Source: Magallana gigas (taxonomy: Eukaryota). From it: a stretch of DNA of 64,000 bases. This document shows positions 38,964 through 63,679 of the stretch, piece after piece (position 1 is the stretch's first letter; each line of letters opens with the position of its first letter). Position numbers and translations under genes: made by a program. The stretch covers positions 12,834,001 to 12,898,000 of the forward strand of contig NC_088858.1 of assembly GCF_963853765.1 (NCBI RefSeq), written 5' to 3'. Below the pieces are notes generated by a model. It made no database searches. It was not told where the DNA came from and worked only from the letters and a program-made list of their open reading frames with translations.

Positions 38964-39955
38964 AGCCCGGTACCAGTTTGTAGGTGTGTAATTTCCCACT
39001 TTTAGATTTAATAGTCTGACTTTACGCAATATCTACATAATTTTTTAACTGTTTATTTTTTCATTTTATTCCTTTTTATTTATTTCAAAATGTCCTATTG
39101 TTTATTTCCTCCCTACTCATGCATGCACAATTAGCTTAAAAATGGATCGCATGCCAAGAAATGCCGTCCGGTTTAGAATAAGCCTAGCTAACGGTCTTCA
39201 ATTATACACTTAATTAAGGTCAGCCGCATTTGCTTGAAAACCCGCAATAAGGGATCGAGCCGAACTAAAGTTTCAGAGATTTGGGTCAGCGGCTGTTTAC
39301 GACAGTCTTTAGAGTGCCAATGTTTATAGCTTAGAGATACGTGTTGGGATAAGAATAAAAAGGACACAAGCTAAGATTTGGAAGACAGACACTTTGTAAT
39401 TAAAAAAAATAATTATGTGATTTTCCTCTTTTACTTATTCATCGTCTCCATATTGTTTACACTTAGAAACACAATCTCTAAGAATTATTTCTCTCTGAAA
39501 TACAGAATGTTATGTTTTGTTTGGGTTTTTTTTTTTTATAAACCTAGCATTTTTTAAAAAATTAAGCCGATATACGTACATGTAATATTGATGTACGTCA
39601 TGTAAAGTGTTAAATACACGGGTATCTTTTTTGTTAAGAGAGTTTTAATTAAGGTATGGCTAACTAACCTTGTATTAAAGGAACTGAATAAATATGAAAT
39701 ATTCAATCGGATGTAAATGTATGACCACCGCAGGGTTTATTATTATGCGATGTTTCATATAATAAATGTTACATGAAAGTTTATAGCGTTAATTTTTAAG
39801 GTATGCTGTAGAATGTATATAACACTTTTTTTATTGTTAGTTTTGAATATATTTCGTTAAACAGACACTGCACCGATCAATTATCTGTATTGGTGGGAAA
39901 TCCGAAATGCAAAAATTCTGGTAAACCGGTAAAAACTAAAACAAAAGTTGTAAAA

Positions 39956-42900
39956 ATGTCGAATTTTTTTCGACCATGGGTGGAGACACGGCCGGCTGTA
40001 CCTGTGCATAGACGTGTAATGTTGCCGTTGAATAACAACATGCAGGTACGTAACTACTTGTTTATGGATGATTCATAGTGTAGGTGATCAATACATTAAA
40101 GTTACCCACTCAGTAGAATGATAACTATAGGCTATATTTTAGCAAAAAATTAAGCCGAAATACTTATATAGTGAATATGCAGAATTTATATAAAAGTCAA
40201 TGTACGTGTATTTGACAAATTTATGTTGATATTGTATGTCATGTCAGTTATTCAGTGAAGCTTTATAATTTTTTTAATTTTTATTTCACATGCATATTTT
40301 ATTGCAATAGGACCACAATGATATGGAAAATAAGAAAACTCCACGCAAAGTAAAAGGATTTTTTGAGCTGAAACATTCTCAAAGAGGAGAAAGGAAAAGA
40401 AAATACCAAAGCGCTTTTCAAGAAGCTTCAAGCTGTGTTCACAGTGATATTTCCTCCATCAAAGTCCAGTTCAATTTTGATAATGGACATGTTTTATCCT
40501 TTTTTCCCCGCAAAGTGTCCCCTGATGAAAATGCTAGTTTGGAAGATGAAGGTGTTAAGAAATCTCAAGACCTTGCTGTAATTCAACAGGTTATTGCAGT
40601 TAAGGACAAGTTCAGAATTTCTGACGAAGCTTTACATGAACTTCATATGATTGGTTCAATAATACCAAGCAAGTCAGCCATCAATACAGAAAAATACCGT
40701 CTCAACACAACTCTTGAAATAATGAGCCATCCAACAGTAAGTACATGTACCGTGCTTTTTTATGTGTTGACCACTGACTTATTTAGCACGTTTTATTATC
40801 TTATCATTTGAATATCAATTTTTAGAAACCGATCGATCATAGCACAAGCCAATTTACTTTTATTTATTTTTTTAACAAAGGCAGACTGCAGTACTAGAAA
40901 GCTAGAGCACATTCTAGAGTTTGTACTTCAACACCAAAAATACCAGAAGTATATTGAGAATGACACTGTTACCCTGCGTTTTTCCTGTGATGGTGCCAAA
41001 ATTGCCAAAAATATCTCCTCAGTAAGAGGGGTGTTCAAGATTTTGGCACCAAGACAGTCATTGCCAGATAAGCTTGAAGATTTGAGCATGTGTCCGGAAG
41101 ATGAGTTTACTCTTTTCTTTTACATTGGTGAGAAACTTTGTATTTATTGAAATTTCCTGTCATGTATTTTGGAATTATTATTTCGATTATCACATGTTTA
41201 TTTCAATTAAGGAGATGAAAATCGATGCAGTTTAGAGGAATATGCCTCTGGGACATTAAGAGACATGGAAAATGTTCAATTGAATGGAATTGTAATCAAT
41301 GGAAGAAAAATCTCTGTAAAGTGGTAAAGTTATCTCATCATCTACGGTTATCGTTTTTTTTTATTCTATACCCTATTTGTTATTATAATATCATTTCAAA
41401 TTCTAAACTGGTACAATTATATATTTTGTAGGATAATGACTTGTGATTGGAAGGCACTTGCCTTACTGAGGGGAATTAATGGCGCTCAATGCGAATTTTT
41501 CTGCATGTGGTGCCACTGCTCCAAAAAGCAGATATGCGATTTCAGTAGTAAGTAACTGTTGTAAATTGATAAAATGATACAAACATTGTAATAAAAACAA
41601 TAGCAATTGCTGGACAACTAATGTGATTTTATAATGTTTTTTGTAGTCCCATCTTGGTTGATACAGAGATCTAAAGAAGAACAACAAACTGTTCTAAATT
41701 CTGAAAAGAAAACGTTCGGGTACAAAGATACAGATCTCTGCCCTTTCATTTCATACCATGACATGCCCATTGATGATCTTCACATGCGCATAAGGATTTC
41801 TCTAAAGCTCTTCAATCAGGTACATTGTCTCTTATTAATATACACGAATGTATACTTTTAACGACTCTGCTAACTATCTGCATACACAAGATCTCATTGC
41901 TTGATTTTGACAATTTTAAATTCAGCTTGTGACCTGGGCAATAGACCAGAAATCTGAAGACAATTTGAAAAGAGAACTGAAACGCGTAGGTGTCAGTTTC
42001 AGAATGTGGGAGGAAAGGGGGGATGACAAATTGAACACCAAAGTGAGGAAATGGTCTCAACCAACAGGTATATATATGCCTTTCTTTAAAAAAAAATACT
42101 ATAAGTGTTTGCAGTTCTTGTAGCAAATCTTCTGAAAAATATTTGCCATTTCATTTGTAGGTGATGATTTACGTAAAATTATAAGAGACGTTCAAATCCA
42201 TCATATTCTGGACAATAAAAAGGACAGGCACTACGTATCAATAGAAAGCCTTTCAGTACAGCAGTTGAGGGACGAATTAACTAACAGACAGCTTTCCAAA
42301 AAAGGAAAAAAACCCGAGCTTGTAGCCCGATTAAAAGATGCTGTCGGAAATAACACTAAGGTATATTTACAGAAACTCAAATTCACTGAATAACATTTAT
42401 ATTTCCTGAATGTTTACATAGTAATATAAAACTTTTCATTCATGTTGTTTTAGATGAGGAGGAATGTAGGCTCTCGTCTTCAGGTATCGTACGACTTTTC
42501 AGAAGATGAAGAACAGGACCTGGACGTCGCAGCCCTGCAAGATCTGTGGTCAGGTTTCCATACGCTCATGGAAAGTCTCCGGGCATTACCTGGAACAGAT
42601 AATTACAAAGATATGGAAACTTTTGCAAAAGAAGCAAAGGAATGGGCCACTGAATTTCGAAAGCAAACCTTCGATGAAGATGTTATCCCATACATTCATG
42701 GTGTGTAAAAATGTTAAAGATTCTATAAAGGAATCATACAGCCTATCCCTACTTCTTTCAGGGTATAAAATTCATTTTGTTTAAATTACATTTTCAGCTA
42801 TGGTTTATCATGTACCACAGTTTCTGCAGACATACCACTACATACATGATATCGGGGTTGCCCAAGTTGAGCGTAAAAATTTTGACCATCGTCAAGCGTA

Positions 42901-43167
42901 CTTTGGAAGCACCAACAGAAATGGGTCCAAATGGAAAAAACATGTCTCAAAGCAGGTACATACCATTATTCAGATAGTCAATCTGCTTGATTTGTTTCAC
43001 AAATTTTTCTGCCTTCTGCAATGAATAATTAATCAAAGATAAATATGCATTTCAGTCCTTGTCATACTTGTGATCTTTAATTACAGATTCTTGAGAGGGA
43101 AAATAGAATGCTTTGGTCCAGTCTACATGGAACTGTACGTGAAAAAAGAAAATATGTAAAGTCTTAA
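39956..43167 (+). CDS. RAG1-core/Transib-like DDE transposase with internal SAP domain (~663 aa, 11 exons)
   Basis: Exons 39956-40045, 40311-40736, 40881-41127, 41212-41323, 41432-41547, 41647-41819, 41926-42067, 42161-42360, 42454-42700, 42798-42955, 43087-43167; all GT-AG, in phase, no stops (1992 nt). Motifs: TVTLRFSCDG, MTCDWKALALLRGINGAQCEFFCMWC, PIDDLH, TGDDLRKII, PYIHAMVYHVP, QVERKN. From memory these correspond to RAG1 VVVKESCDG, GYDEK...CTLC, IDALH, NGNFARKLM, NYFHKTLAHVP and GNESGN. Confidence 0.85.
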
Positions 43168-44845
43168 ATACCGTCGTTTAGCTACAGTCCCAGTAACCAT
43201 GTTTCTACGAGACCTCGTAAAAGTTACGTGAATCCAGGATGGACCACGAACATACAGTATTACAGGGTCACATAGCTGTGGTCGGTTCTCCTCAGCATCT
43301 TTCCACGTGCATCTAAACAAAGATTTTTATAATGAAGCAGATCTTTATTATTATCAAGCAATATTTATTAAGAAGCCCACAAAGATGAACAAATATTGTA
43401 TTTCTATGTATAGAAATGTTGTTTTGTTATATTAAAATAATATTGTATCACACTTTTGATATTATTGTTATTGTTTTTACTATTACAATTAAGTAAATAA
43501 TGTATAAAATTGATGTTCCTTATTGCAATAATATTGTATCACACATTTGTTATTATTATTGGTTTTTTTTAAATTAAGTAAATAAACATTCACATTGGAT
43601 TAAATTTATATAATCATACCTTTTACAATTATTGTGTTGGTATTGCTTTCTCTCCTTATATCCCCACCAGACATGAATAAACTCTTTGAAGGAGACAAAT
43701 GTTTCTGTTGATGTTTTGTAACATCTATTTGACCAGTTCTCTCCAATGGCAGAAGTCATTTCTTCACCTGTAAAAATAAACATAAATTACTTAACAATTA
43801 TTTTTAGTAACCGAACACTTGCATTCCAAGTATGTCTTTCAAGATACCTCCTGTCTCCACTTGCATGGGACCAAAACTTTAAATAGACTTGTCATATGCT
43901 CAAGAAAACAATTATCATAATATTGCTTCAGATAGTTCATTACCTGTGAGGTAGAAATCCACATTTCCATTGTCTGTTGGCAGAGTATCCATCAAAGACC
44001 TGAAGTATTTATTAAAACTTGCACAAGAAAAAGGCACTTTCACTGTTGTCCTCGACTGGATGCCTAATGCACCATCAGGTGTACGGCGTGCATCGCCTAA
44101 ACTGTCAAAGATGGCCTGTCGCAGTGCCATAATGTCATCAGGGTTGTTCCTGCAGTCTATTTTGTTGGAATCTAAATTCCTGCGGTGAAGATGACAAGAG
44201 AGGGGGTTTCCTTTATTTCTTTCAATGAATTGCTGCAATTCCTGGTTTCCATCTAAACTGACCCAGGTTGATGGTCCCTCCCAGTCCTTCCATTTTACTA
44301 GCACTTCTTGCTCCCTCCTCTCTAAAATGTCTTCAATCTCCCATAGTTTCTGAGATAAATTGTTGAGAATAGTTTAAAACATGAATGATTATTCTATTAT
44401 TGTTTTTCTTAATTAGTTTGGATAATTCATAATTTTTCCCGATGTAGGATATTCGTGATCTAAGAGTGGCGCTAGATCCGCCTACACACTTTGACTGAGA
44501 TTTGTATACCTGCTTCAAATAAATATAAATAATAGAATATAGTTCTAAAATACACATAAAGGTAGATCAAAAGGGAACCCTAACGATATTTAACGATCGC
44601 AAACCATAATATATACATAGATATGTCTATACATATTATAAACATCATCAGGGACTTGTACTATGATTATTACAACTATTCTTAGAAATGAATATGTTAC
44701 AAAAGTTTAAATGTAAGTATATACGATATTTGTATAATAATATTTACCGTACCTCTTTCGACTTGTTTTCCTTTAAACTTCTAAAATTTAAATTTTCCTC
44801 CCAATCTCCGAATCTTACAGGGGCTCTTCTCTTTCTCTGTGCCAT
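43123..44845 (-). CDS. Chromodomain-containing protein (~278 aa, 4 exons) convergent with the transposase
   Basis: Exons 44845-44753 (MAQRKRRAPVRFGDW.., NLS-like), 44349-43944, 43767-43620, 43312-43123; phases 0/1/2 are consistent. Chromodomain KLWEIEDILERREQEVLVKWKDWEGPSTWVSLDGNQELQQFI, followed by an unrecognised ~190-aa domain. Confidence 0.8.
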
Positions 44846-45158
44846 TTCTTAGATAAGAATGCAGCTGAAGAAAGCACACAGGGAGCTCGATTTCACTTAA
44901 TCGGTTCATCGCCGTGGTAACGCTGACCGCCTGGGATGTGGTCACTAATTTATAACGGGGTTGTGAAAGCGGAATATTGGAGCAGAATTTCTTGGCATGA
45001 TATGACAGTAAATTATGGCTCTTGCTGATATATATACATAAAATCTCTATATTAAAAAAAATTAAAAACAAATCATACGTCAATGAGGCAGGTACCGCAG
45101 TCTATACTGAAATAGCTAGTACACGCATTACAGATGTTTGATCCACCTCTAAATTTAT

Positions 45159-45193
45159 CGCGGGAAATATAGCGCGAGTGCACTGTGACGTCA
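45159..45193. promoter_or_regulatory. Candidate POLD2 / bidirectional promoter: E2F site and palindromic CRE
   Basis: GCGGGAAA (45160-45167), TGACGTCA (45186-45193), AG|GTATGG donor at 45242 (probable 5'UTR exon), second TTTCCCGCG at 45445-45453, acceptor TTTCAG at 45780. Confidence 0.6.
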
Positions 45194-45467
45194 TCCATGA
45201 CTTTGTTCGTCTTTGTTTACGTTTCTCGACTCAATACAGAGGTATGGAAGCATGTAACAAATCTTTTGAGTCTCGCCAAAGCATATGCGGTACTCAAAAC
45301 GTGTCTTCAAACTTTAAGTCACTGTAAATTACGAGTTAAAAGTCGGCCATTTTTGGCATAGCACCACGGGTGAAAACATTAGAGAGCATTATGGGACGTA
45401 GACAAAAAATTTTGTTTGATGAACTGTAGGTTTAGCTCGTTCTTTTTCCCGCGCACACTGGTTCTTA

Positions 45468-45515: not shown

Positions 45516-45903
45516 ATTATAAATTATAGTTTTATATGTAGGCTATTCAGTCTACATTTCGACGTTAAAGCCTCGCTAAAAAGTGGAGCGAAGCAGGAAC
45601 GATAACTCTGGGTAGAGATTGCCTCTCCTAAATTTACGTGATTGTAATGGTAATACACATAAGATATGATATATAATTGAATTTGAGTTTTTACTACAAA
45701 CATGGTTCCTCAGACAGATAGACAGACAGTGAAAAAACCCACGTAATATATTTGATATCGTTCGTGAATAACTATTTCAGACTCAATGGAAAAGTTCATG
45801 CTTACAGGAAACAGTTTTCGTACGAAATAATATCTTCGATTGACTATCGCGCCTCAAGAAACAAAAGATTTCCACTGGCGCGAACGGTGATAAACAAAAA
45901 GAA

Positions 45904-48900
45904 ATGTTTGAGAAAAAAGGGGGTAATCATCCCGACGACCTTTTGTCAAAACCTTCACAGACACACAAAGCATGTGAAAGACAATCGGGCAACTTTTCAG
46001 ACTGCTCACATAGGTTTCTACTGAAGGATAAAACTTTCAGCAGGCAATATGCACATTTATATGCAGAAAGATTGTGGGAAGTACGTCCGAAAGTAGAGGC
46101 TTCTGCAAGAAAAAAATGGGGTATAAATAGAATATGTTTTGTTTCATATTTAATTTGTAATATTTTGTTTTAGTGGTTAATAGATTTACACCTTTTTAGA
46201 ACAAGATGTAAACACATGACCTGCTGAATTTTTTTTATTACACTCTGGCCTATATTTAATAATATCACAAATCAAATTGCTGAGTGTTCAAAACTAGTTG
46301 GTACTTGCTTGTTAATATATAGCTTCATGTCAAACAGTGCCTTATACGGTTCATACGATGAGACTGACACATACATCGGTATACAGGTCCAGTACAATCT
46401 CCAGATTTAGCTATATAGCTTGAATAAGCTAAATAGCTTTATTAAGCTATTTCAGAATAGCTTCATTTAGCTATTTTGTCATACATTTTTCTTAAATGTG
46501 TAATTTTTTCAGTATGTATAAAAAATCGCGCTTTAGTGCAGTGATAATTTTCAACTTTGAACTGTTATATAAACAATGCATGTAAAGATTACTCAAAAGT
46601 TTGCGTCTCCTTAAAGAGACTTTGCACTAAAAGTTTTGGGGCAACTGATTCATGAACACACAGTTACTTCTTGAATGAAATATAAAGGAGGTCAGTTATG
46701 GTAAACAAGATAATTGATTGGTAATAATTTATCACAATGAGAAGAAATCATACTTATCCACGCCTCATTGCACACAAAGTGGTGAACAGTTACCCAAACA
46801 ATGGAAATGTATTTTTTGCTTAAAAGTGTTTAAATCTGCAGTGTTAAAACTATCTTGCATTTGGGTCAAGTTTATAATGGTCAGTGGCGCAAATATGAGT
46901 AGCAAGTTAATTGCGATTTTTCGTCCATTTCTTACAATTAATATTTTCTTCAAAAACTGCATATAAATAGCTTTATTAAGCTATTTTGAATAGCTTTATA
47001 AAGCAATATAGCTTTTTCAAGCTATATAGCTAAATCTGGAGATTGTACTGGACCTGGTACATATACCTTTAGGTACTTGTGACAGTAGTTTTTTTGTCCC
47101 CCGCCGCAACGCGGTGCGGGGACATAGAAATGCCGGGCGTCCGTCCGTGCGTCCGTGTGTCCGTGCGTCCGTGTGTCCGTGCGTCTGTGCGTCCGTGTGT
47201 CCGTGCGTCCGTGTGTCCGTCCGTCACACTTTTTTGTAAGCGCTCTCATGCCTACAAATTTTGACGGATTTTCATTAAATTTATACCAAATGTATATACC
47301 ACTATTACCTTGGTCAAGTTCGAAAATCAGCATTGGTCGATACTACTTGTTGGAGTTATGGTACTTTGACCGCAATAATGACTCTGTTTTATCCAAAAAT
47401 TGACCTTGTAAGCGCTCTCATGCCTACAAATTTTGACGGATTTTCACTAAATTTATACCAATTGTATATACCACTATTACCTTGGACGAGTTCGAAAATC
47501 AGCATTGGTCGATACTTTTTGTTGGAGTTATGAGACTTTGACTGCAATTATGACTCTGTTTTATCCATAAATTGACCTTGTAAGCGCTCTCATGCCTACA
47601 AATTTTGACAGATTTTCATTAAATTTATACCAAATGTTTATATCGCTATTACCTTGGTCAAGTTCGAAAATCAGCATTGGTCGATACTTTTTGTTGGAGT
47701 TATGGTACTTTGACCGCAATAATGACTCCGTTTTATCCAAAAATTGACCTTGTAAGCGCTCTCATGCTTACAAATTTTGACAGATTTTCATTAAATTTAT
47801 ACCAAATGTTTATACCACTAATACTTTGGTCAAGTTCGAAAATCAGCATTGGTCGATGGACTCGATACTAGTATACTGCTTGACCGGCGGGGGACTCAGG
47901 AATTCTATTCTTGTTTACTAGGTTTTCATTTATTAATGCACATGACGGTTGTGTGTGCTGTGTATATCACTGTAATTATACCCTGTCCCAAGTTTCTGCT
48001 TCCAACACTTTTTGTTTGATATTTCGAAAACCATAAATACCTTTGTGCCCAATAGGGCTGGGACGATACTGTACTTAGCCGATTAGGTACATATCACAAT
48101 AAATGAGATGCGATACGATACATATCACTATACATTGCAACTTAATGAAAACATGAATAAGGGCTTAAATTTTATTGAATCTGTCAACGTATTACCGCAT
48201 GTCCAAAGTGATTTCATTATATGAATATATATATCATTTCAAAATGAGCATTGCACAATTTACAAATTACTTTAGTCTTGTATTCACTACTTTTTCATAA
48301 AGAAGTAATCCAAAAGTTTTCCACACTCCAGAATTAGATTCATAACAGTTTTGACAACTTTAAGAGGTTTTCCGCTATCTTTGTACTTTCATGATAGGCG
48401 CGCGGACTAAAAATAGCCAATATATATAGCTTGGATATTTTTGGAAATTAAAAAAAAGTTTGCTAAGGTATTGTTGTATTATTGGTAAATGTATAGATCC
48501 AAATATCGTCAAAATAAATACCGCGATGCACAGGTGCATCAGTGGATTGTCCCATTCCTAGTGCCCAACTACATTTATCCATTAGAATAAAAAAAAAGTT
48601 CAAATTTTCTGTTTTGAAACGCCCCCGCCGCTGCAGGTTCCAACACACAACCAAAAATAAAAAGTCTACGTTAAGTTCAAAAATAAAAAGTCTACGGGTA
48701 TATTGCATGGCAAACAACATGAAAACAACATGAAAAGTTCCAGAATGATAACGTTGAAAAATTGAGAGAATTGTTCTGAGTACCGTACGGTGCTTCCAAT
48801 TGGAGAAAAGGTGTTAAAATTCCTCATTATAAATCTCCGTAAGAAATTTGTTTTTGTTCATTTTAATTTCTCGGTGTATAAAAAAATGAAATGTCAATGA

Positions 48901-57224: not shown

Positions 57225-58439
57225 TGTAACGGGATGAGCGGAGGCTACTCCAAACAACAACAAGACATCTTAAATTTAACAAAATTTAATAAAAAAAAAA
57301 TAAGAGAAAGAAAGAAAAGATAGAAATATAAACACTAAACCACACAAACACTCACACACCTTTCACTCAACAAGAAAAAATATGATGTTTATACAAATGA
57401 CCAAAAATAAATTAGAAGAGTGTCCGAATCTCCGGGGCTGTAGTCCTGGACCAACTACGGACAACCACAACTAGAGTAGTTTCGTCACCACAATCATCAT
57501 CATCACCATCGCCATCATAATCATCGACACTATCGTCAACATCATCAACTACAACACCATAATCATAATAGACATCATCGTCATCACCATAATCATCTAC
57601 TTCATAATCATCACCGACGTCACCATGAACGACATCATCTTCATCGACATGACCATCATCATCGTCGTCGTCATCATCACCATAACATCATCTTCTCAAC
57701 ATCAACAATATGACACTACAATAAGTGTACAAGTGACACCATAACACCATAATAAAAACAATATTGTATAATACATCATATAAGTATCTCACTGATAGTA
57801 TCAAACTATGATAATGTATAAATAGTATTATATTAAAGGCAACATCTCAAAATATTGTAAGTATATGGTAACTAAGTTATTTGTTTACAGTAAACAATAT
57901 GGCGTCTGAGACTTCCGGTGACGCACTTCCGCCCAAGTAGTTAAGTGGAAAAAGTGACAATAAATTGTAAAATAAAATAACGCATAGAAAATAGCCCTTT
58001 AAATCACCGTTTCTTTATACAGCAATAGCAAAAACTGTACTATAGAAAAAGACGAATTCCATTTAAACACTCTCGCTAAAGTCACACATCAGTGAACACA
58101 CAGGTAACTCTACAGTGAACAATGGTCAAGGTGACTTTATAGGACGACTGCGTAATACTAATAAAAAGGCAAAAATTTACAAATAAACTACACCAAACTA
58201 AATAAATACTTACCACGGTCAGCTATCCGTGTCCGCGTCAAATGCTGAACTTGTGAAACTAAAACATGCCACACAGGCTTCTAACACGATACCCCCTTCA
58301 CACACTAAGCACGTCTTAATTGCTGGACAGCTCGGCCGGGTATAACTTAGCGCCTATTGTTAGCGTCGGCCAAGCACGTTGCAAAGAATTATGGGAAAAA
58401 TAAAATCGGGTGTGTTCGATATGAACAGTGATTGTCACA
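57225..58439 (-). repeat. 3' LTR (1215 bp)
   Basis: Direct repeat of 62454-63679; adjacent to the polypurine tract. Confidence 0.97.
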
Positions 58440-58452
58440 CACCTCCCCCCTT
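58440..58452 (-). other. Polypurine tract (PPT)
   Basis: G-rich purine run on the minus strand immediately before the 3' LTR start TGTGACA. Confidence 0.85.
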
Positions 58453-58556
58453 AAAAAATTGTCCTGCAATTTCAAATAAACAATCACTGAATTTTGAAAA
58501 TTCTCACGTATTTACAATAAAACCTATACACATACCTGTACTGTCTACTATACATC

Positions 58557-61500
58557 TCACTGACGACTCAGGTAATCCGCACCCACATTGTCGCTTCCTT
58601 TGATCGCAATGATCCTAAAGCGGTATGGCTGAAGCTGCAAAGCCCAACGCATCAGTCTGGAGTTCTCTGTCTTTGCTTTGTTAAGGTAGGTCAGGGGTTG
58701 GTGATCAGTTTCAAGTAGAAACTCGCGTCCATAAAGGTACTGGTGGAACTTCTGTATTCCCCACACTACCGCCAAACACTCCTTCTCGATAACAGCGTAT
58801 GCCTTTTCTCTTGGTTGAAGTTTCCTACTGGCGTACGCTACGGGTAGTTTCTCGTCATCCTCCATCTGTAACAGCACAGCACCTATCCCATCATCTGCAG
58901 CGTCCGTGCGTAAAATGAAGGTTTCATTAAATTCTGGCAACTTCAATATTGGCCTTTCTGATAACATGTGTTTCAATGTATCAAAAGCTCGTTGCTGACT
59001 TTCAGTCCAAATAACTTTATTTGGTTGGCCCTTCTTCGTAAGATCAGAAAGTGGAATGGCTATCGCAGAGAAATTCGGAATAAACTTTCTGTAGAATCCT
59101 GCTAAGCCTAGGAAGGCACGAACCTGTTTCTTGGTTTGTGGTATTGGCGCATTTCTGACTGCATCAATCTTGTCCTGTTCTGGTTCTAGACACTTGTTGC
59201 CCACCATATGTCCCAAACAGTCAATCTTGTCAAATCCGATGAAACATTTTGTCGGTCTGGCCGCAAGTCCCGCATCTCTTGAGTCGTTCGAACACAGTCT
59301 TCAGTATGTGTAGATGTTCTTCAAAGGTATCTGTAAAAACAATGACATCATCGATAAAGTTTTCTACGCCGTTCATACCTTGAAGTAGTTTTCTCATCAT
59401 ACGACTAAATGTTGCCGGCGCGTTTACAAGACCAAACGGCATTGTCCTGAATTGGTACAATCCGGATGGTGTGGAAAAGGCTGTAAGCGGCTTACTCTCG
59501 TCAGCCATCGGTACTTGCCAGTATCCTTTGCTTAAGTCTATCTTTGACACAAACTTCTTTCCGGTCATATTGGAAAATATGCTTTCTGGACTGGGCATTG
59601 GTTCTGCATCAAATACCGTAGCACAGTTCAGTCGTCTATAATCAATGCAAAATCGATTCGTTCCATCTTTCTTCCGAGCTATGACAACTGGAGCTGAATA
59701 AGGGGAAGATGATGGCTCAATCACATTCAACTGTAGCATTTTCTGAACTTCTTCTGTAATTGTTTTCTCTGTACTGAACGGAATTGGATATGGTTTCACA
59801 CGCACAGGTTCAGACGATGTCACAACAATCTTATGCTCCACTAAGTTCGTCACTCCAGGTATATCCGTAAATACATCTGAGAACGAATCACACAGTGATT
59901 TAGCAGTTTCCAACTGATCTGGTGTTAGTCTGTCTGCAAACTTTATGTCCTTTGCTGTTTCGGTTTGAGTAACAGGTGGCATAAGAATAGAGTCCTGTTG
60001 TTCATCATCATCTAGGTCACTAAAGTCTATGAGTGAAATTGCACATGTTGACAAAACACCACAGTTCAATGTATCTCGTTCAACATACTTCTTAAGAAGA
60101 TTTGCGTGGAAAGTTTTCAGCTTGCCTCCCATATCGATCTTGTAGTCCATCTGTCCTAACGGTACTGCAGGTACTTTTCCTTTCGGAATAGTCCGCTGAC
60201 ACACGTCACATGATCTGCAAAACCGTCTAATGTCTGACTGAATTCCTGGCCAGTAAAATTCGGACACTACTCTGTCGGTTGTTTTCTTTGATCCCAGATG
60301 ACCACCCATCAGCGTTTCATGTGCTATCTTCATGACGATAGTTCTGTATTTCCGAGGAACGATTAACTGTCGGAAAAGTTTTCCACTGGACACTTTGGGA
60401 CTGCAAAATTCTCTGAACAACATTTGCTTCCGTTCACACATTTTTGAAAATCCGCCGTCACTGAAATGTTTAAGCTGTCCACTCTCAGCTAAGCTCCATA
60501 ACTTTTTCAGTGTCTCGTCGTTTCGTTGTTCTTGTAAGATATCCTCCGGCGATACATCCCGTATTGCTTCCGGTACTTTCAATGGTTTGTATGGAGACTG
60601 TTTCTTTTTCAGTTGCGCACGCGTTTCAACAGCTGCTATGTTTTCAACGGAATGAATCCAGGCTGGATTTGGTTCATGTGGTTTCCTTACTCCACGAATA
60701 TTACCAAGAATAAGATCGTACGAAGGCGAATCAAAGCACCAAGCATCAACACTTCCGGTAAAGTAAGGAGTATCGACATCAATTCTAGCCACATCTGAAT
60801 CAATAATACGACCGTCTGCTAACTTGCATCGTTGAGATGTCCCTGTTAGTTGATCATCGTTTACCAGTTCTCTACGAATAACGGCACCACTACAACCTGT
60901 GTCTCTTAGCACAGTCACTAGTTTATTGCCAACACATCCTTTCACAACTGGCATTTCCGTTTCACAGAAAGCAACCGAATCACCAACACACGGTAAGTTT
61001 CCATGTTTCTCGACGACACTCGCGGCTCCTTGGCGACCTCTACCGCGTCCTGGATATCCATGGTTCCCATTATTGTACGACCCACGTTGAAAATCACTAG
61101 GGTAAGTATGTTTCGGTGTTGTTTCTTGTTTCTCGCTCGAATTAAACGGCCTGTTATTCGGACTTTTGCGGAAGTTGCAGTTAAAGGCTTTATGTCCTTG
61201 TCGTCCGCACTCATAACACTTCACTGCATTTCCAGATTGGTTTTGTTGCACGGAATCTTTGTACGGCGGTTGTCTATCGGACTGCTGTCGTCTGTCAAAG
61301 AGCGGTTTTTGCGTAAGTGAAGAGGATGTCACTGTTCTGGCCTCAGCAAACTGGTCCGCGTATCGCGCCATGTCTTGGATCGAAGTAGGAATCCTCTCCT
61401 TTAGGAATAAGGCAAGTTCTTTCGAGCAACACAATAAAAACTGTTCACGTAAGAACAAGTCCTTCAGATCATCGAATGTCTTGTTAGTCTTAGACAGCTG

Positions 61501-62199
61501 AATCCACCGCTCAAGGTAACTGTCCAGTCTGGTAGAAAATTGCATAAAAGTTTCACTTCCGTCTGGTTTTGAAAATCGGAACTTCTTGCGGAAACCGTCC
61601 TCCGTCATGTCAAATCGTTTCAACAGGACGTTCTTCAACTCGTTGAAATCAAGTGCTGTTTCGGGTGAGAGTCTTGCGAACACATCCAGTGCCTTTCCTT
61701 TGAGTAATGCGCTAAGATGAGTCCCCCACGTGTCTTTATTCCATTTCTGCGTTGTTGCGTATATCTCAAATCTTTGAATGTACGCGTCAATGTTGTCTTT
61801 CGAATCCTCAAACGGAGGAAGTTTTGGTCCTTTTATCACTTGAGAAGTTTCTTTCTCCTCTTTAGTCACAACACTCGGATTCATGTGAGATCTCTCGAGT
61901 TGCAGTTTGTGATCAAGTTCCAGTTCTTCTAGTTTTTGCTGATGTCTCTTTTCTTCTATCAATCGGGCGTGCTCTCGCTCATCATGTTCTCTTGCGGCGC
62001 GCTCTTTCTCCATCTGTAGTTTGAAGTCGCGGTCTCTCTCCTCCTGGTCTCTCTCCTCCTGTCTCTCGACTCTATGTTTCTCACGTTCGTCCCGCATTCT
62101 GGCCTGTTCGTCCTTCACGAATTGTTGAAGGTCTTCATCCTTCATCCCCATCTTGGTCCCCACTTCAAGTAGCTCCAGCATCTCCTTGACAGTAGACAT
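58557..62199 (-). pseudogene. gag-pol (Gag with SCAN-like region and CCHC knuckle, protease, integrase Zn-finger and C-terminus only, RT, RNase H), with integrase-core deletion and a +1 frameshift
   Basis: CYECGRQGHKAFNC; LRDTGCSG; HETLMGGHLG..YWPG..CRSCDVC; GYWQVPM..FIDDVIVF; RTDAADDGIGAVL..YAVIEKECLAVVW..ETDHQPL. Frame shifts at ~59280. Confidence 0.9.
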
Positions 62200-62433
62200 G
62201 GTGCATTGACTGACAGACCAACTTACCTCAAAATTATCTCATAAAGGGACTAACTTCTCAACTTTTAACAAAACAATCTGCCTAACGTAATGTACTCACC
62301 AAGGGAAAAGGAAACAACGACCTACACTTGCTCTTACATGTACTACAAAAGAGATCAAAAAATGAAAAATAAAATAAACCTTGGCAACTGTTCACTTATA
62401 AAGATATCTTGTAGTATCTGGAGGAGTCAACTC

Positions 62434-62451
62434 ATCCCACCGCTGCCACCA
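62434..62451 (-). other. Primer binding site complementary to tRNA-Leu 3' end
   Basis: Minus strand TGGTGGCAGCGGTGGGAT, 2 nt from the 5' LTR; matches the 3' end ATCCCACCGCTGCCA(CCA) of metazoan tRNA-Leu(AAG/TAG) as I recall it. Confidence 0.85.
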
Positions 62452-62453
62452 AT

Positions 62454-63679
62454 TGTAACGGGATGAGCGGAGGCTACTCCAAACAACAACAAGACATCTT
62501 AAATTTAACAAAATTTAATAACAAAAAAAAATAAGAGAAAGAAAGAAAAGATAGAAATATAAACACTAAACCACACAAACACTCACACACCTTTCACTCA
62601 ACAAGAAAAAATATGATGTTTATACAAATGACCAAAAATAAATTAGAAGAGTGTCCGAATCTCCGGGGCTGTAGTCCTGGACCAACTACGGACAACCACA
62701 ACTAGAGTAGTTTCGTCACCACAATCATCATCATCACCATCGCCATCATAATCATCGACACTATCGTCAACATCATCAACTACAACACCATAATCATAAT
62801 AGACATCATCGTCATCACCATAATCATCTACTTCATAATCATCACCGACGTCACCATGAACGACATCATCTACATCATCTTCATCGACATGACCATCATC
62901 ATCGTCGTCGTCATCATCACCATAACATCATCTTCTCAACATCAACAATATGACACTACAATAAGTGTACAAGTGACACCATAACACCATAATAAAAACA
63001 ATATTGTATAATACATCATATAAGTATCTCACTGATAGTATCAAACTATGATAATGTATAAATAGTATTATATTAAAGGCAACATCTCAAAATATTGTAA
63101 GTATATGGTAACTAAGTTATTTGTTTACAGTAAACAATATGGCGTCTGAGACTTCCGGTGACGCACTTCCGCCCAAGTAGTTAAGTGGAAAAAGTGACAA
63201 TAAATTGTAAAATAAAATAACGCATAGAAAATAGCCCTTTAAATCACCGTTTCTTTATACAGCTATAGCAAAAACTGTACTATAGAAAAAGACGAATTCC
63301 ATTTAAACACTCTCGCTAAAGTCACACATCAGTGAACACACAGGTAACTCTACAGTGAACAATGGTCAAGGTGACTTTATAGGACGACTGCGTAATACTA
63401 ATAAAAAGGCAAAAATTTACAAATAAACTACACCAAACTAAATAAATACTTACCACGGTCAGCTATCCGTGTCCGCGTCAAATGCTGAACTTGTGAAACT
63501 AAAACATGCCACACAGGCTTCTAACACGATACCCCCTTCACACACTAAGCACGTCTTAATTGCTGGACAGCTCGGCCGGGTATAACTTAGCGCCTATTGT
63601 TAGCGTCGGCCAAGCACGTTGCAAAGAATTATGGGAAAAATAAAATCGGGTGTGTTCGATATGAACAGTGATTGTCACA
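62454..63679 (-). repeat. 5' LTR (1226 bp)
   Basis: Differs from the 3' LTR by a 2-nt and a 9-nt indel and at least one substitution (AGCAATAGC vs AGCTATAGC). Confidence 0.97.

What the first reader, a model, noticed from the sequence alone, without database searches (positions are those of the whole stretch)
39956..44845. RAG-like two-gene cassette: RAG1/Transib-type transposase paired tail-to-tail with a chromodomain reader instead of RAG2
Seen: two intact, spliced, convergent genes with no spacer; one carries the RAG1-core motif series and the other a chromodomain. Known: ProtoRAG/RAGL transposons carry RAG1L and RAG2L tail-to-tail, and RAG2 reads H3K4me3 through its PHD finger, whereas Transib carries the transposase alone. 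Inference: this may be a distinct RAG1-like lineage that independently recruited a methyl-lysine-reading partner, as an active element or a domesticated recombinase module. I know of no described element with this gene pair, but could not search.
Basis: partly seen in the sequence, partly recalled or inferred. Interest (0 to 1): 0.93.

Follow-up and report, generated by a model that had tools for sequence, protein, structure and literature searches.

The report
Conserved transposase plus chromodomain gene pair
Two overlapping, convergent oyster genes, one a cutting enzyme with the same fold as the immune recombinase RAG1 and the other a small chromatin-reader protein, have stayed paired from sea anemones (where the pair still jumps) to molluscs (where it looks like a fixed host gene pair), a parallel to RAG1-RAG2.

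Summary
The window (Crassostrea/Magallana gigas or a very close relative) carries an 11-exon, 663-aa gene (39956-43167, +) and a 5-exon, 268-aa gene (44845-42997, -). Public RNA supports nearly all splice sites, and the 3' ends interleave.

- **Large protein:** its predicted fold matches RAG1 best (Z 20.5; Foldseek E 2e-12). D209/D297/E609 and C316/C319/H584/H589 are invariant. It carries an internal SAP domain.
- **Small protein:** it has a chromodomain fold with an intact aromatic cage and a conserved H-C-C-C motif.
- **Pairing:** the convergent pair recurs in Saccostrea, Mytilus, Mercenaria and Littorina. In Nematostella it forms a 5,030-bp element with 10-bp inverted ends and five identical copies.
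- **Selection:** both oyster genes are under purifying selection (dN/dS 0.12 and 0.16), and no inverted ends flank them.

The motif series and the fold define the whole EnSpm/Mirage/Chapaev/Transib (CMCT) clade, not RAG1/Transib specifically. Defining Transib, RAGL and Chapaev features are not met. The best reading is a domesticated two-gene module from an unnamed CMCT lineage.

The scan had already noted a mobile relative elsewhere in this genome. I found no published description in the held library.

The parts
39613..45000 (.). Whole conserved unit: the only stretch of the window that aligns with the Saccostrea locus (both genes plus about 340 bp and 155 bp of upstream sequence)
   Evidence: blastn window vs L002; no inverted repeats at its edges
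39956..40045 (+). Large gene, coding exon 1 (residues 1-30); uncertain
   Evidence: Same as NCBI model P0055; 88% identical to Saccostrea exon 1; but intron 1 is retained in RNA contig X17 record 15, in which case translation starts at the ATG at 40323
40311..40736 (+). Large gene exon 2 (N-terminal basic/helical region)
   Evidence: RNA joint 40736>40881
40881..41127 (+). Large gene exon 3, carries first catalytic Asp D209 (F-S-C-D-G)
   Evidence: strand beta-1 of the RNase H-like fold in the model
41212..41323 (+). Large gene exon 4
   Evidence: RNA joints at both sides; confirmed by transcript-derived protein P0031
41432..41547 (+). Large gene exon 5: second catalytic Asp D297 (C-D-W-K) and zinc ligands C316, C319; 38-aa exon with identical boundaries in molluscs and the Nematostella element
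41647..41819 (+). Large gene exon 6 (conserved D-x-L-H block, D373/H376)
41926..42067 (+). Large gene exon 7
42161..42360 (+). Large gene exon 8: SAP domain (residues about 460-497) inserted in the helical insertion domain
   Evidence: Pfam PF02037 E 1.3e-11; fold match to SAP domains Z 6.1; also present in the Nematostella protein
42454..42700 (+). Large gene exon 9, ends with zinc ligand H584
42798..42955 (+). Large gene exon 10: H589 and catalytic E609 (V-E-R-K-N)
43087..43167 (+). Large gene exon 11 with stop codon TAA (43165-43167); the 3' UTR runs to about 43524
44753..44845 (-). Small gene exon 1 (basic N-terminus, start ATG at 44845)
   Evidence: RNA joint 44753>44349
43944..44349 (-). 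Small gene exon 2: chromodomain (cage W34, W51, W54) and the start of the unassigned middle domain
43620..43767 (-). Small gene exon 3 (middle domain; ends with H-x2-C-x-R)
   Evidence: RNA joints; colinear with uninterrupted homologs P0010-P0012
43172..43312 (-). Small gene exon 4: rest of the H-C-C-C motif, RP-x2-C, and the basic F-T-R-x-R-R-N block
   Evidence: conserved from oyster to Nematostella; RNA joints 43620>43312 and 43172>43015
42997..43015 (-). Small gene last coding exon (R-Q-K-N-L, stop), lying inside intron 10 of the large gene; the transcript continues antisense (further joint 42961>42586)
   Evidence: RNA joints in runs X1 and X2; gives 268 aa, matching 269 aa in Saccostrea and 267 aa in Mytilus

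Best explanation
The locus is a fixed, expressed host-gene pair that descends from a two-gene cut-and-paste DNA transposon of the CMCT clade (the EnSpm/CACTA-Mirage-Chapaev-Transib group, to which RAG1 also belongs). Gene 1 encodes a 663-aa RAG1-fold DDE enzyme with an intact active site (D209, D297, E609), an intact C2H2 zinc site (C316, C319, H584, H589) and a SAP DNA-binding domain inside its helical insertion. Gene 2, convergent and interleaved at the 3' end, encodes a 268-aa protein with an N-terminal chromodomain that has a complete aromatic cage, a middle domain of unknown fold, and a C-terminal H-C-C-C zinc-type motif with a basic tail. Shown: structure, expression, fold, residue conservation, conserved linkage across two phyla, mobility of the same pair in Nematostella, and purifying selection on both oyster genes. 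Inferred: the two proteins act together, with the small one binding methylated histone tails and directing or licensing DNA binding and cleavage by the large one. That would be analogous to, but not homologous with, RAG2's PHD finger guiding RAG1. In the mobile form this would steer integration. In molluscs the module has been kept for a host function that still needs the catalytic site.
For: Gene models and RNA support; identity to NCBI's model. RAG1-type fold: Foldseek top 49 hits all RAG1/Transib/BbRAGL, best E 2.2e-12; VIA-align Z 20.5 to RAG1 core, 19.2 to BbRAGL, 12.7 to HzTransib, against 11.1 for P element. All catalytic and zinc residues invariant in 11 homologs. SAP. Chromodomain fold: model residues 1-60 at pLDDT 82-92; all top 50 Foldseek hits are chromodomains; Z up to 5.9; cage W/W/W(Y) invariant. 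Linkage: a convergent small-gene homolog sits directly downstream in Saccostrea, Mytilus, Mercenaria, Littorina and Nematostella. Mobile form: five 100% identical 5,030-bp Nematostella copies with 10-bp TIRs and unrelated flanks. Host-gene behaviour: dN/dS 0.124 (658 codons) and 0.159 (271 codons) at dS about 0.5, all intron positions kept, introns about 75% identical. One locus was returned for each of the six mollusc proteins that could be looked up. No TIRs. Protein tree congruent with the species tree where resolved. CMCT framing: PMC12730594 and PMC4411706; Atlas neighbours.
Against: Orthologous position is not proven. Outside the 5.4-kb unit nothing aligns between Crassostrea and Saccostrea within 8-10 kb, and no shared neighbour genes were found in any mollusc locus. 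A low-copy, vertically persisting mobile unit is therefore not excluded. Batillaria lacks the small gene within 10 kb. Active transposons can also show low dN/dS. Physical interaction of the two proteins, methyl-lysine binding and nuclease activity are all untested. The structure models are of moderate overall confidence (mean pLDDT 68 and 70) and come from shallow alignments (11 and 8 sequences). Placement within CMCT rests on fold and feature neighbours, not on a phylogeny with reference transposases.
Confidence: 0.68

Rival explanations
1. The pair in this window is itself a still-mobile, low-copy two-gene transposon whose termini I failed to recognise; it is not a domesticated host locus.
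For: Similarity with Saccostrea stops sharply at the unit's edges with no alignable flank. No shared neighbour genes were found. The same architecture is demonstrably mobile in Nematostella, and an earlier scan note reports an intact mobile relative in this genome. That family seems to leave no target duplication, which makes ends hard to see.
Against: No inverted repeats at the edges in either oyster. Matches to Nematostella-type termini are at chance level. One locus was returned per genome. The tree follows the species tree. Homology at the edges decays gradually (68% identity in the promoter), not abruptly. A dispersed repeat abuts the right edge, which suggests flank turnover.
Confidence: 0.17
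2. One reading: a distinct lineage specifically within or sister to RAG1/Transib that independently recruited a methyl-lysine reader.
For: The best solved-structure matches are RAG1 and BbRAGL, over the whole core from the dimerisation domain to the C-terminal domain. H-x4-H spacing is as in RAG1. Orientation is convergent, as in RAGL. The left end of the Nematostella element partly resembles the protostome RAGL TIR consensus.
Against: Motifs and fold are CMCT-wide. Pfam's RAG1 models and a family profile against PDB RAG1/Transib give nothing. The Atlas nearest neighbour is a DUF1280-type fungal cluster, with RAG1, Transib-like and Transposase_21 clusters about equally distant. Termini start CAT rather than the invariant CAC, and there is no 5-bp TSD.
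Confidence: 0.12
3. Two unrelated host genes that merely happen to be neighbours, with the large one an inactive transposase relic.
For: No interaction or activity data exist. Pfam does not recognise either protein apart from the SAP domain.
Against: The adjacency and orientation are kept in six genomes of two phyla and inside a mobile element bounded by TIRs. All catalytic and zinc residues are invariant. Both genes show strong purifying selection.
Confidence: 0.03

Closest known systems
RAG1-RAG2 locus and RAGL/ProtoRAG transposons
   Same: A RAG1-type fold over the whole core (Z 19-20.5), a DDE triad with C2H2 zinc site, and two convergent genes: transposase plus a partner that carries a histone-reader domain. 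Both a mobile form and a fixed form exist.
   Different: No sequence-level similarity to RAG1 models. The partner is a chromodomain/H-C-C-C protein, not a Kelch propeller plus PHD finger. There is no NBD-type nonamer-binding domain, N-terminal zinc finger or RING detected; it has a SAP domain instead. Termini of the mobile relative start CAT, and no 5-bp duplication is seen.
Transib transposons (e.g. HzTransib)
   Same: Same fold (Z 12.7; Foldseek E 5e-8) and motif order; found in cnidarians and protostomes.
   Different: Transib carries one gene, has CAC termini and makes 5-bp TSDs. None of these holds here.
Chapaev / Chapaev3 (CMC superfamily, placed in the Transib superfamily by Kapitonov and Koonin 2015)
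   Same: A distant RAG1-like core with C(2)C and H(3-4)H motifs; first described in Nematostella and lancelet. An earlier scan note calls the oyster mobile relative 'Chapaev-type'.
   Different: No N-terminal Chapa zinc finger. Chapaev3 has CAC termini, 3-bp TWA duplications and a single ORF (PMC3014272). Here there are CAT termini, no duplication and two genes.
EnSpm/CACTA elements
   Same: A CMCT core; multi-gene, intron-containing elements with 5'-CA..TG-3' ends.
   Different: No Transposase_21/DUF4218 Pfam match. Atlas similarity is lower (0.86; TM 0.56). The second gene is unrelated to TnpA as far as tested. No 3-bp TSD.
Chromodomain-bearing integrases of chromoviruses and Maverick/Polinton elements (own knowledge)
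   Same: A mobile-element enzyme coupled to a chromodomain, thought to steer integration by histone marks.
   Different: There the chromodomain is fused to a retroviral-type integrase. Here it sits on a separate, convergently encoded protein beside a RAG1-fold enzyme.
HARBI1-NAIF1, the domesticated Harbinger transposase plus Myb-like partner (own knowledge)
   Same: A two-protein transposon system in which both partners were domesticated and conserved.
   Different: A different superfamily (PIF/Harbinger). The two vertebrate genes are no longer adjacent, and the partner is a Myb-like DNA binder, not a chromatin reader.

Membership tests
CMCT clade (EnSpm/CACTA-Mirage-Chapaev-Transib, incl. RAG1) | [quoted passage not shown] | tested here: met
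   D209, D297, C316-x2-C319, H584-x4-H589 and E609 are invariant. The model has the beta1-3/alpha/beta4 topology with the Asp residues at the expected places. Fold matches.
CMCT clade (EnSpm/CACTA-Mirage-Chapaev-Transib, incl. RAG1) | 5'-CA...TG-3' termini and 2-5 bp target-site duplications | tested here: inconclusive
   The mobile Nematostella relative has CATATCAAAC...GTTTGATATG termini (met), but no duplication at any of 5 insertions (not met). The oyster locus has no termini at all.
Transib superfamily sensu stricto | Core recognisable by RAG1/Transib sequence models | tested here: not met
   No Pfam RAG1 family hit at E up to 10. phmmer and a family-profile hmmsearch against the PDB find only SAP domains.
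Transib superfamily sensu stricto | TIRs beginning CAC (heptamer-like), 5-bp TSD, single gene | tested here: not met
   CAT termini, no TSD and two genes in the Nematostella element. Reference features from PMC7204232.
RAGL / ProtoRAG | Convergent partner gene encoding RAG2L (Kelch propeller, usually with PHD finger) | tested here: not met
   The partner is convergent, but it is a 268-aa chromodomain protein. Fold searches give only chromodomains.
RAGL / ProtoRAG | RAG1-type core fold from the dimerisation domain to the C-terminal domain | tested here: met
   Model 112-658 aligns to mouse RAG1 458-1008 (438 residues, rmsd 4.2, Z 20.5) and to BbRAGL 545-1111 (Z 19.2).
Chapaev / Chapaev3 | N-terminal Chapa (NZD-like) zinc-finger domain | tested here: not met
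   N-termini of the oyster, Batillaria and Nematostella proteins are basic/coiled-coil without Cys/His clusters. Chapa alignment seen in the PMC4411706 supplement.
Chapaev / Chapaev3 | CAC termini and 3-bp TWA duplication | tested here: not met
   against PMC3014272.
Chapaev / Chapaev3 | Core groups with Chapaev transposases in a phylogeny | not testable with these tools
Chromodomain proteins (methyl-lysine readers) | Three-stranded sheet plus C-terminal helix, with a three-residue aromatic cage | tested here: met
   Model pLDDT 82-92 over residues 1-60. All top 50 Foldseek hits are chromodomains. Cage W/W/W (Y in Nematostella) is invariant. Pfam Chromo is below threshold only (best 21.2 bits against 25.1).
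Chromodomain proteins (methyl-lysine readers) | Binding of a methylated histone lysine | not testable with these tools
   Needs peptide-binding assays.
Domesticated transposase genes | Fixed orthologous locus without transposon ends, under purifying selection | tested here: inconclusive
   Purifying selection, no ends and a species-tree-like phylogeny are met. Synteny of flanking genes could not be shown.

The most novel reading that the evidence does not exclude
Molluscs keep a catalytically active, two-subunit, chromatin-guided DNA recombinase: a RAG1-fold enzyme plus a chromodomain partner, domesticated independently of RAG1-RAG2 from a transposon that is still jumping in sea anemones. It would carry out programmed DNA cleavage or rearrangement, or transposon policing, at histone-marked sites. 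This would be a second, independent 'RAG-like' domestication in animals.
Probability: 0.12. Interest if true: 0.92.

Novelty: new variant of a known kind. Interest (0 to 1): 0.72.

Why it matters
RAG1-RAG2 is the textbook case of a two-gene transposon turned into a host recombinase, and how a RAG1-type transposase came to depend on a chromatin-reading partner is still an open question. Here a distant RAG1-fold enzyme is tied to a different histone-reader protein in the same convergent layout, and it exists in both states. One state is a very recently mobile 5-kb element in a laboratory model (Nematostella, five identical copies). The other is a selectively maintained pair across gastropods and bivalves, apparently fixed, with every catalytic residue intact. 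The partnership between a transposase and a chromatin reader, and its domestication, can therefore be tested experimentally outside vertebrates. The finding also flags an apparently unnamed CMCT lineage with unusual properties: a SAP insertion, no target-site duplication and two genes.

Tried and rejected
- **Sequence links to RAG1/Transib.** Pfam on single exons and on full-length homologs, phmmer of exons and homologs against the PDB, and hmmsearch with the family profile A1 were all negative except for SAP.
- **Deepening the family.** A profile search added almost nothing. The family is small in public protein sets (39 hits in 1.84 billion representatives).
- **Transposon ends around the oyster unit.** The inverted-repeat search, edge-against-edge alignment in Crassostrea and Saccostrea, and a search for Nematostella-type termini (103 matches against 116 expected by chance) found none.
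- **Target-site duplication in Nematostella.** None of 1-9 bp at five insertions.
- **Synteny.** tblastn and tblastx of window flanks against the mollusc loci gave only noise. The C. virginica locus could not be fetched.
- **P0069 as a fused 'Rosetta stone'.** A profile comparison of the partner family with the N-terminus of P0069 was not significant (probability 4%), so it is not used as evidence.
- **Middle domain of the partner.** No convincing fold match in the PDB or the Atlas, and language-model neighbours were uninformative.
- **High RNA depth at 45049.** Rfam found no match.
- **Retrotransposon remnant.** The chromodomain as a gypsy-integrase remnant is rejected. The nearest retroelement is 13 kb away, and the gene is spliced, conserved and linked to the transposase in other phyla.
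- **Practical limit.** The spliced proteins have no reference, so searches used exons or the near-identical database proteins P0055 and P0054.


Full report
**1. What is there**

The window is AT-rich eukaryotic DNA. RNA and DNA runs that hold it are from oysters. Reading the three frames across the region gave GT-AG introns that join eleven plus-strand exons (39956-43167) into a 663-aa product. That product differs at only three residues from NCBI's C. gigas protein LOC105327491 (P0055), and its last 441 residues are identical to P0054.

Contigs of four public runs laid on 39800-45200 show GT..AG joints at exactly introns 2-10. Two of these runs are on record as RNA; for the other two, RNA is the tool's guess. 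Intron 1 is retained in the one full-length contig, so the first 34 residues are less sure. However, exon 1 is 88% identical in Saccostrea while intron 1 does not align at all.

On the minus strand, the ATG at 44845 opens a gene whose three introns are confirmed by CT..AC joints. Two further minus-strand joints (43172>43015 and 42961>42586) extend it antisense into the large gene. Using the first of these gives a 268-aa protein ending A-K-R-R-R-Q-K-N-L. This matches the annotated 269-aa Saccostrea and 267-aa Mytilus neighbours. The last coding exon of the small gene thus lies inside the last intron of the large gene, so the two genes interleave at their 3' ends.

**2. The large protein**

Pfam sees only a SAP domain (E 1.3e-11). 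Neither single sequences nor an 11-member family profile reach any RAG1 or Transib sequence in Pfam or the PDB.

An AlphaFold2 model built from the family alignment has mean pLDDT 68, with the core at 80-95. It was searched in two independent ways:

- **Foldseek against the PDB:** the first 49 hits are all RAG1, HzTransib or amphioxus BbRAGL. The best is E 2.2e-12 with TM about 0.5 over roughly 640 columns. The first other transposase, P element, comes at E 7.8e-5.
- **VIA-align against 48,161 representative chains:** Z 20.5 to the mouse RAG1 core (438 residues, rmsd 4.2, model 112-658 against RAG1 458-1008), 19.2 to BbRAGL and 12.7 to HzTransib. Other transposases score 11.1 (P element), 10.0 (ISCth4) and 6.9 (Hermes).

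D209, D297, E609, C316, C319, H584 and H589 are invariant in every homolog that covers them. In the model, D209 and D297 lie at the positions expected for the first two catalytic residues of an RNase H-like fold. E609 lies on a helix at the C-terminal end of the core.

The SAP segment is also present in the Nematostella protein and in all bivalve proteins, so it is ancestral. Batillaria's gene model lacks it.

**3. What family this is**

[quoted passage not shown] This is the CMCT clade, and it usually has 5'-CA..TG-3' ends and 2-5 bp duplications. Kapitonov and Koonin (PMC4411706) place Chapaev and Chapaev3 inside the Transib superfamily as only distantly related clades. Only RAG1, RAGL and Transib of this clade have solved structures, so any CMCT enzyme would hit RAG1 first.

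The ESM Atlas gives a broader view:

| Neighbour cluster | Feature score | Shape TM |
|---|---|---|
| Mucoromycota cluster, partly DUF1280 | 0.91 | 0.62/0.73 |
| Vertebrate RAG1 | 0.86-0.90 | about 0.6 |
| Arthropod Transib-like | 0.89 | 0.58/0.64 |
| EnSpm-type Transposase_21 | 0.86 | 0.56 |

The DUF1280-type cluster is nearest by both measures, and the others are about equally distant. The defining Chapa zinc finger of Chapaevs is absent.

I therefore file the protein as a member of the CMCT clade in a lineage I cannot name. I do not file it as Transib, RAGL or Chapaev.

**4. The small protein**

Sequence support for a chromodomain is below threshold: the best is 21.2 bits against Pfam's 25.1, in homolog P0012.

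A model of homolog P0012 folds residues 1-60 at pLDDT 82-92 as three strands plus a helix. All 50 best Foldseek hits are methyl-lysine-binding chromodomains (CBX2/7, MPP8, CDYL, LHP1, Rhino, HP1), with target TM about 0.6. VIA-align gives Z up to 5.9 over residues 1-67, and all of the nearest Atlas clusters carry Chromo. The three cage positions are W/W/W in every mollusc and W/W/Y in Nematostella.

Residues 70-180 match nothing convincing. The C-terminal exon carries H-x2-C-x2-C, then RP-x2-C and a basic F-T-R-x-R-R-N block, all conserved from oyster to sea anemone. This is probably a zinc-binding element (inference).

**5. The pairing is not chance**

Orthologs of the large gene were found in C. 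gigas, Saccostrea, C. virginica, Mytilus (two species), Mercenaria, Batillaria, Littorina and Nematostella. I fetched the loci and searched them with the small protein:

- A convergent homolog lies immediately downstream in Saccostrea (overlapping), Mytilus (5 bp away) and Mercenaria (about 130 bp away).
- It lies about 2.4 kb downstream in Littorina.
- It is present in every Nematostella copy, at 31% identity and E about 1e-24.
- Only Batillaria lacks it within 10 kb.

**6. The mobile form**

In Nematostella the identical 563-aa protein is encoded at five places. The copies are 100% identical 5,030-bp blocks with unrelated flanks and perfect 10-bp inverted ends, CATATCAAAC...GTTTGATATG. No target-site duplication of any length is visible at any of the five sites.

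All copies carry one in-frame stop at about three quarters of the small ORF, after which homology continues.

The 38-aa exon with D-W-K...C-x2-C has the same boundaries in the element and in all mollusc genes. The introns are therefore older than the split between the mobile and the fixed forms.

**7. Mobile or fixed in the oyster?**

For fixation:
- dN/dS between the window and Saccostrea is 0.124 for the large gene (658 codons) and 0.159 for the small gene (271 codons), at dS about 0.5.
- Every intron position is kept, while the introns have drifted to about 75% identity.
- There are no inverted repeats at the unit's edges in either species.
- Matches to Nematostella-type termini are at chance level.
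- One locus was returned for each mollusc protein that could be looked up.
- The protein tree recovers gastropods (98/95) and oysters (100/100) as clades.

Against:
- Similarity with Saccostrea is confined to 39613-45000.
- I could find no shared neighbour gene in any mollusc locus.

A dispersed repeat with very high RNA depth abuts the right edge, so repeat turnover could explain the unalignable flanks. Synteny remains unproven. I put about two thirds on a domesticated pair and about one sixth on a still-mobile low-copy unit.

**8. How it probably works**

Shown: two co-inherited, co-expressed genes; an enzyme with an intact DDE/zinc architecture of RAG1 type and a SAP DNA-binding module; and a partner with a cage-bearing chromodomain.

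Inferred: the partner binds a methylated histone tail and recruits or licenses the enzyme on chromatin, much as the PHD finger of RAG2 does for RAG1 and as chromodomains do for chromoviral integrases (own knowledge). In the mobile element this would bias integration. In molluscs the retained active site suggests a host function that still involves DNA cleavage or strand transfer.

**9. Earlier scan notes and literature**

Notes on another piece of this genome (s1-382346 and s1-382363) describe an intact mobile two-gene element with a RAG1-fold transposase and a convergent chromodomain partner. It is said to insert without a duplication and to be 'Chapaev-type'. That lead sent me to the CMC/Chapaev literature.

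My data agree on the fold, on the partner and, through the Nematostella copies, on the missing duplication. The Chapaev label itself is not supported by the features I could test.

Full-text searches for Transib or Chapaev together with chromodomain found no description of such a partner gene. The RAGL surveys I read mention none either.

**10. Verdict**

This is a new variant of a known kind, a two-gene CMCT transposon lineage and its apparently domesticated mollusc descendant.

Noticed in passing
window 57415-62927: A Ty3/gypsy-type retrotransposon on the minus strand: a 1,002-aa and a 247-aa open frame (58560-62238), flanked by two near-identical repeats (57415-57687 and 62646-62927) that look like LTRs. 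It is unrelated to the chromodomain gene 13 kb away.
   Followed up: no
window 45049-45200: RNA contig depth jumps 100- to 1000-fold here, and contigs of three runs all diverge at 45168. This points to a dispersed, highly transcribed repeat abutting the small gene's promoter. There is no Rfam match.
   Followed up: partly
window 42586-43312, minus strand: The small gene's transcript continues by two further splices antisense through the large gene's last intron and into exon 9. The two mRNAs are therefore partly complementary, giving a possible natural antisense pair.
   Followed up: partly
window 46384-47056 and 47234-47857: A 68-nt inverted repeat pair (94% complementary, 537 nt apart) that looks like a small MITE, followed by a 172-bp tandem repeat of 3.6 copies.
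   Followed up: no
window 45844-46170, plus strand: An exon-like open frame that from memory resembles the small subunit of a replicative DNA polymerase. It would be the right-hand neighbour gene. It is not seen within 8 kb of the Saccostrea pair.
   Followed up: no
L007 6226-6228 (all five Nematostella copies): The small ORF of the mobile element has one in-frame stop codon, after which homology to the mollusc proteins continues for about 60 residues. The copies nevertheless spread recently, so the stop may be read through, the truncated protein may suffice, or the copies may be mobilised in trans.
   Followed up: partly
L014 10001-12612 (Mytilus coruscus): A distant, nearly intronless homolog of the large protein (about 25% identity over about 500 aa) is preceded on the same strand by a canonical chromodomain segment, and the two are annotated as one protein (P0069). 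It may be a lineage in which reader and enzyme are fused. A profile comparison with the partner family was not significant.
   Followed up: partly
P0050 and P0062 (database proteins): P0050 joins an N-terminal fragment of a paralog of the large protein to a retroviral-type integrase. P0062, an older C. gigas model, joins the SAP-containing part to an FCF1 rRNA-processing protein. Both are probably annotation chimeras.
   Followed up: no
L007-L011 flanks: One Nematostella copy sits in an IMPDH intron, one in an intron of a large EGF/lectin gene and one in a GAT microsatellite. Two copies have long poly-C or poly-G tracts next to one end.
   Followed up: no
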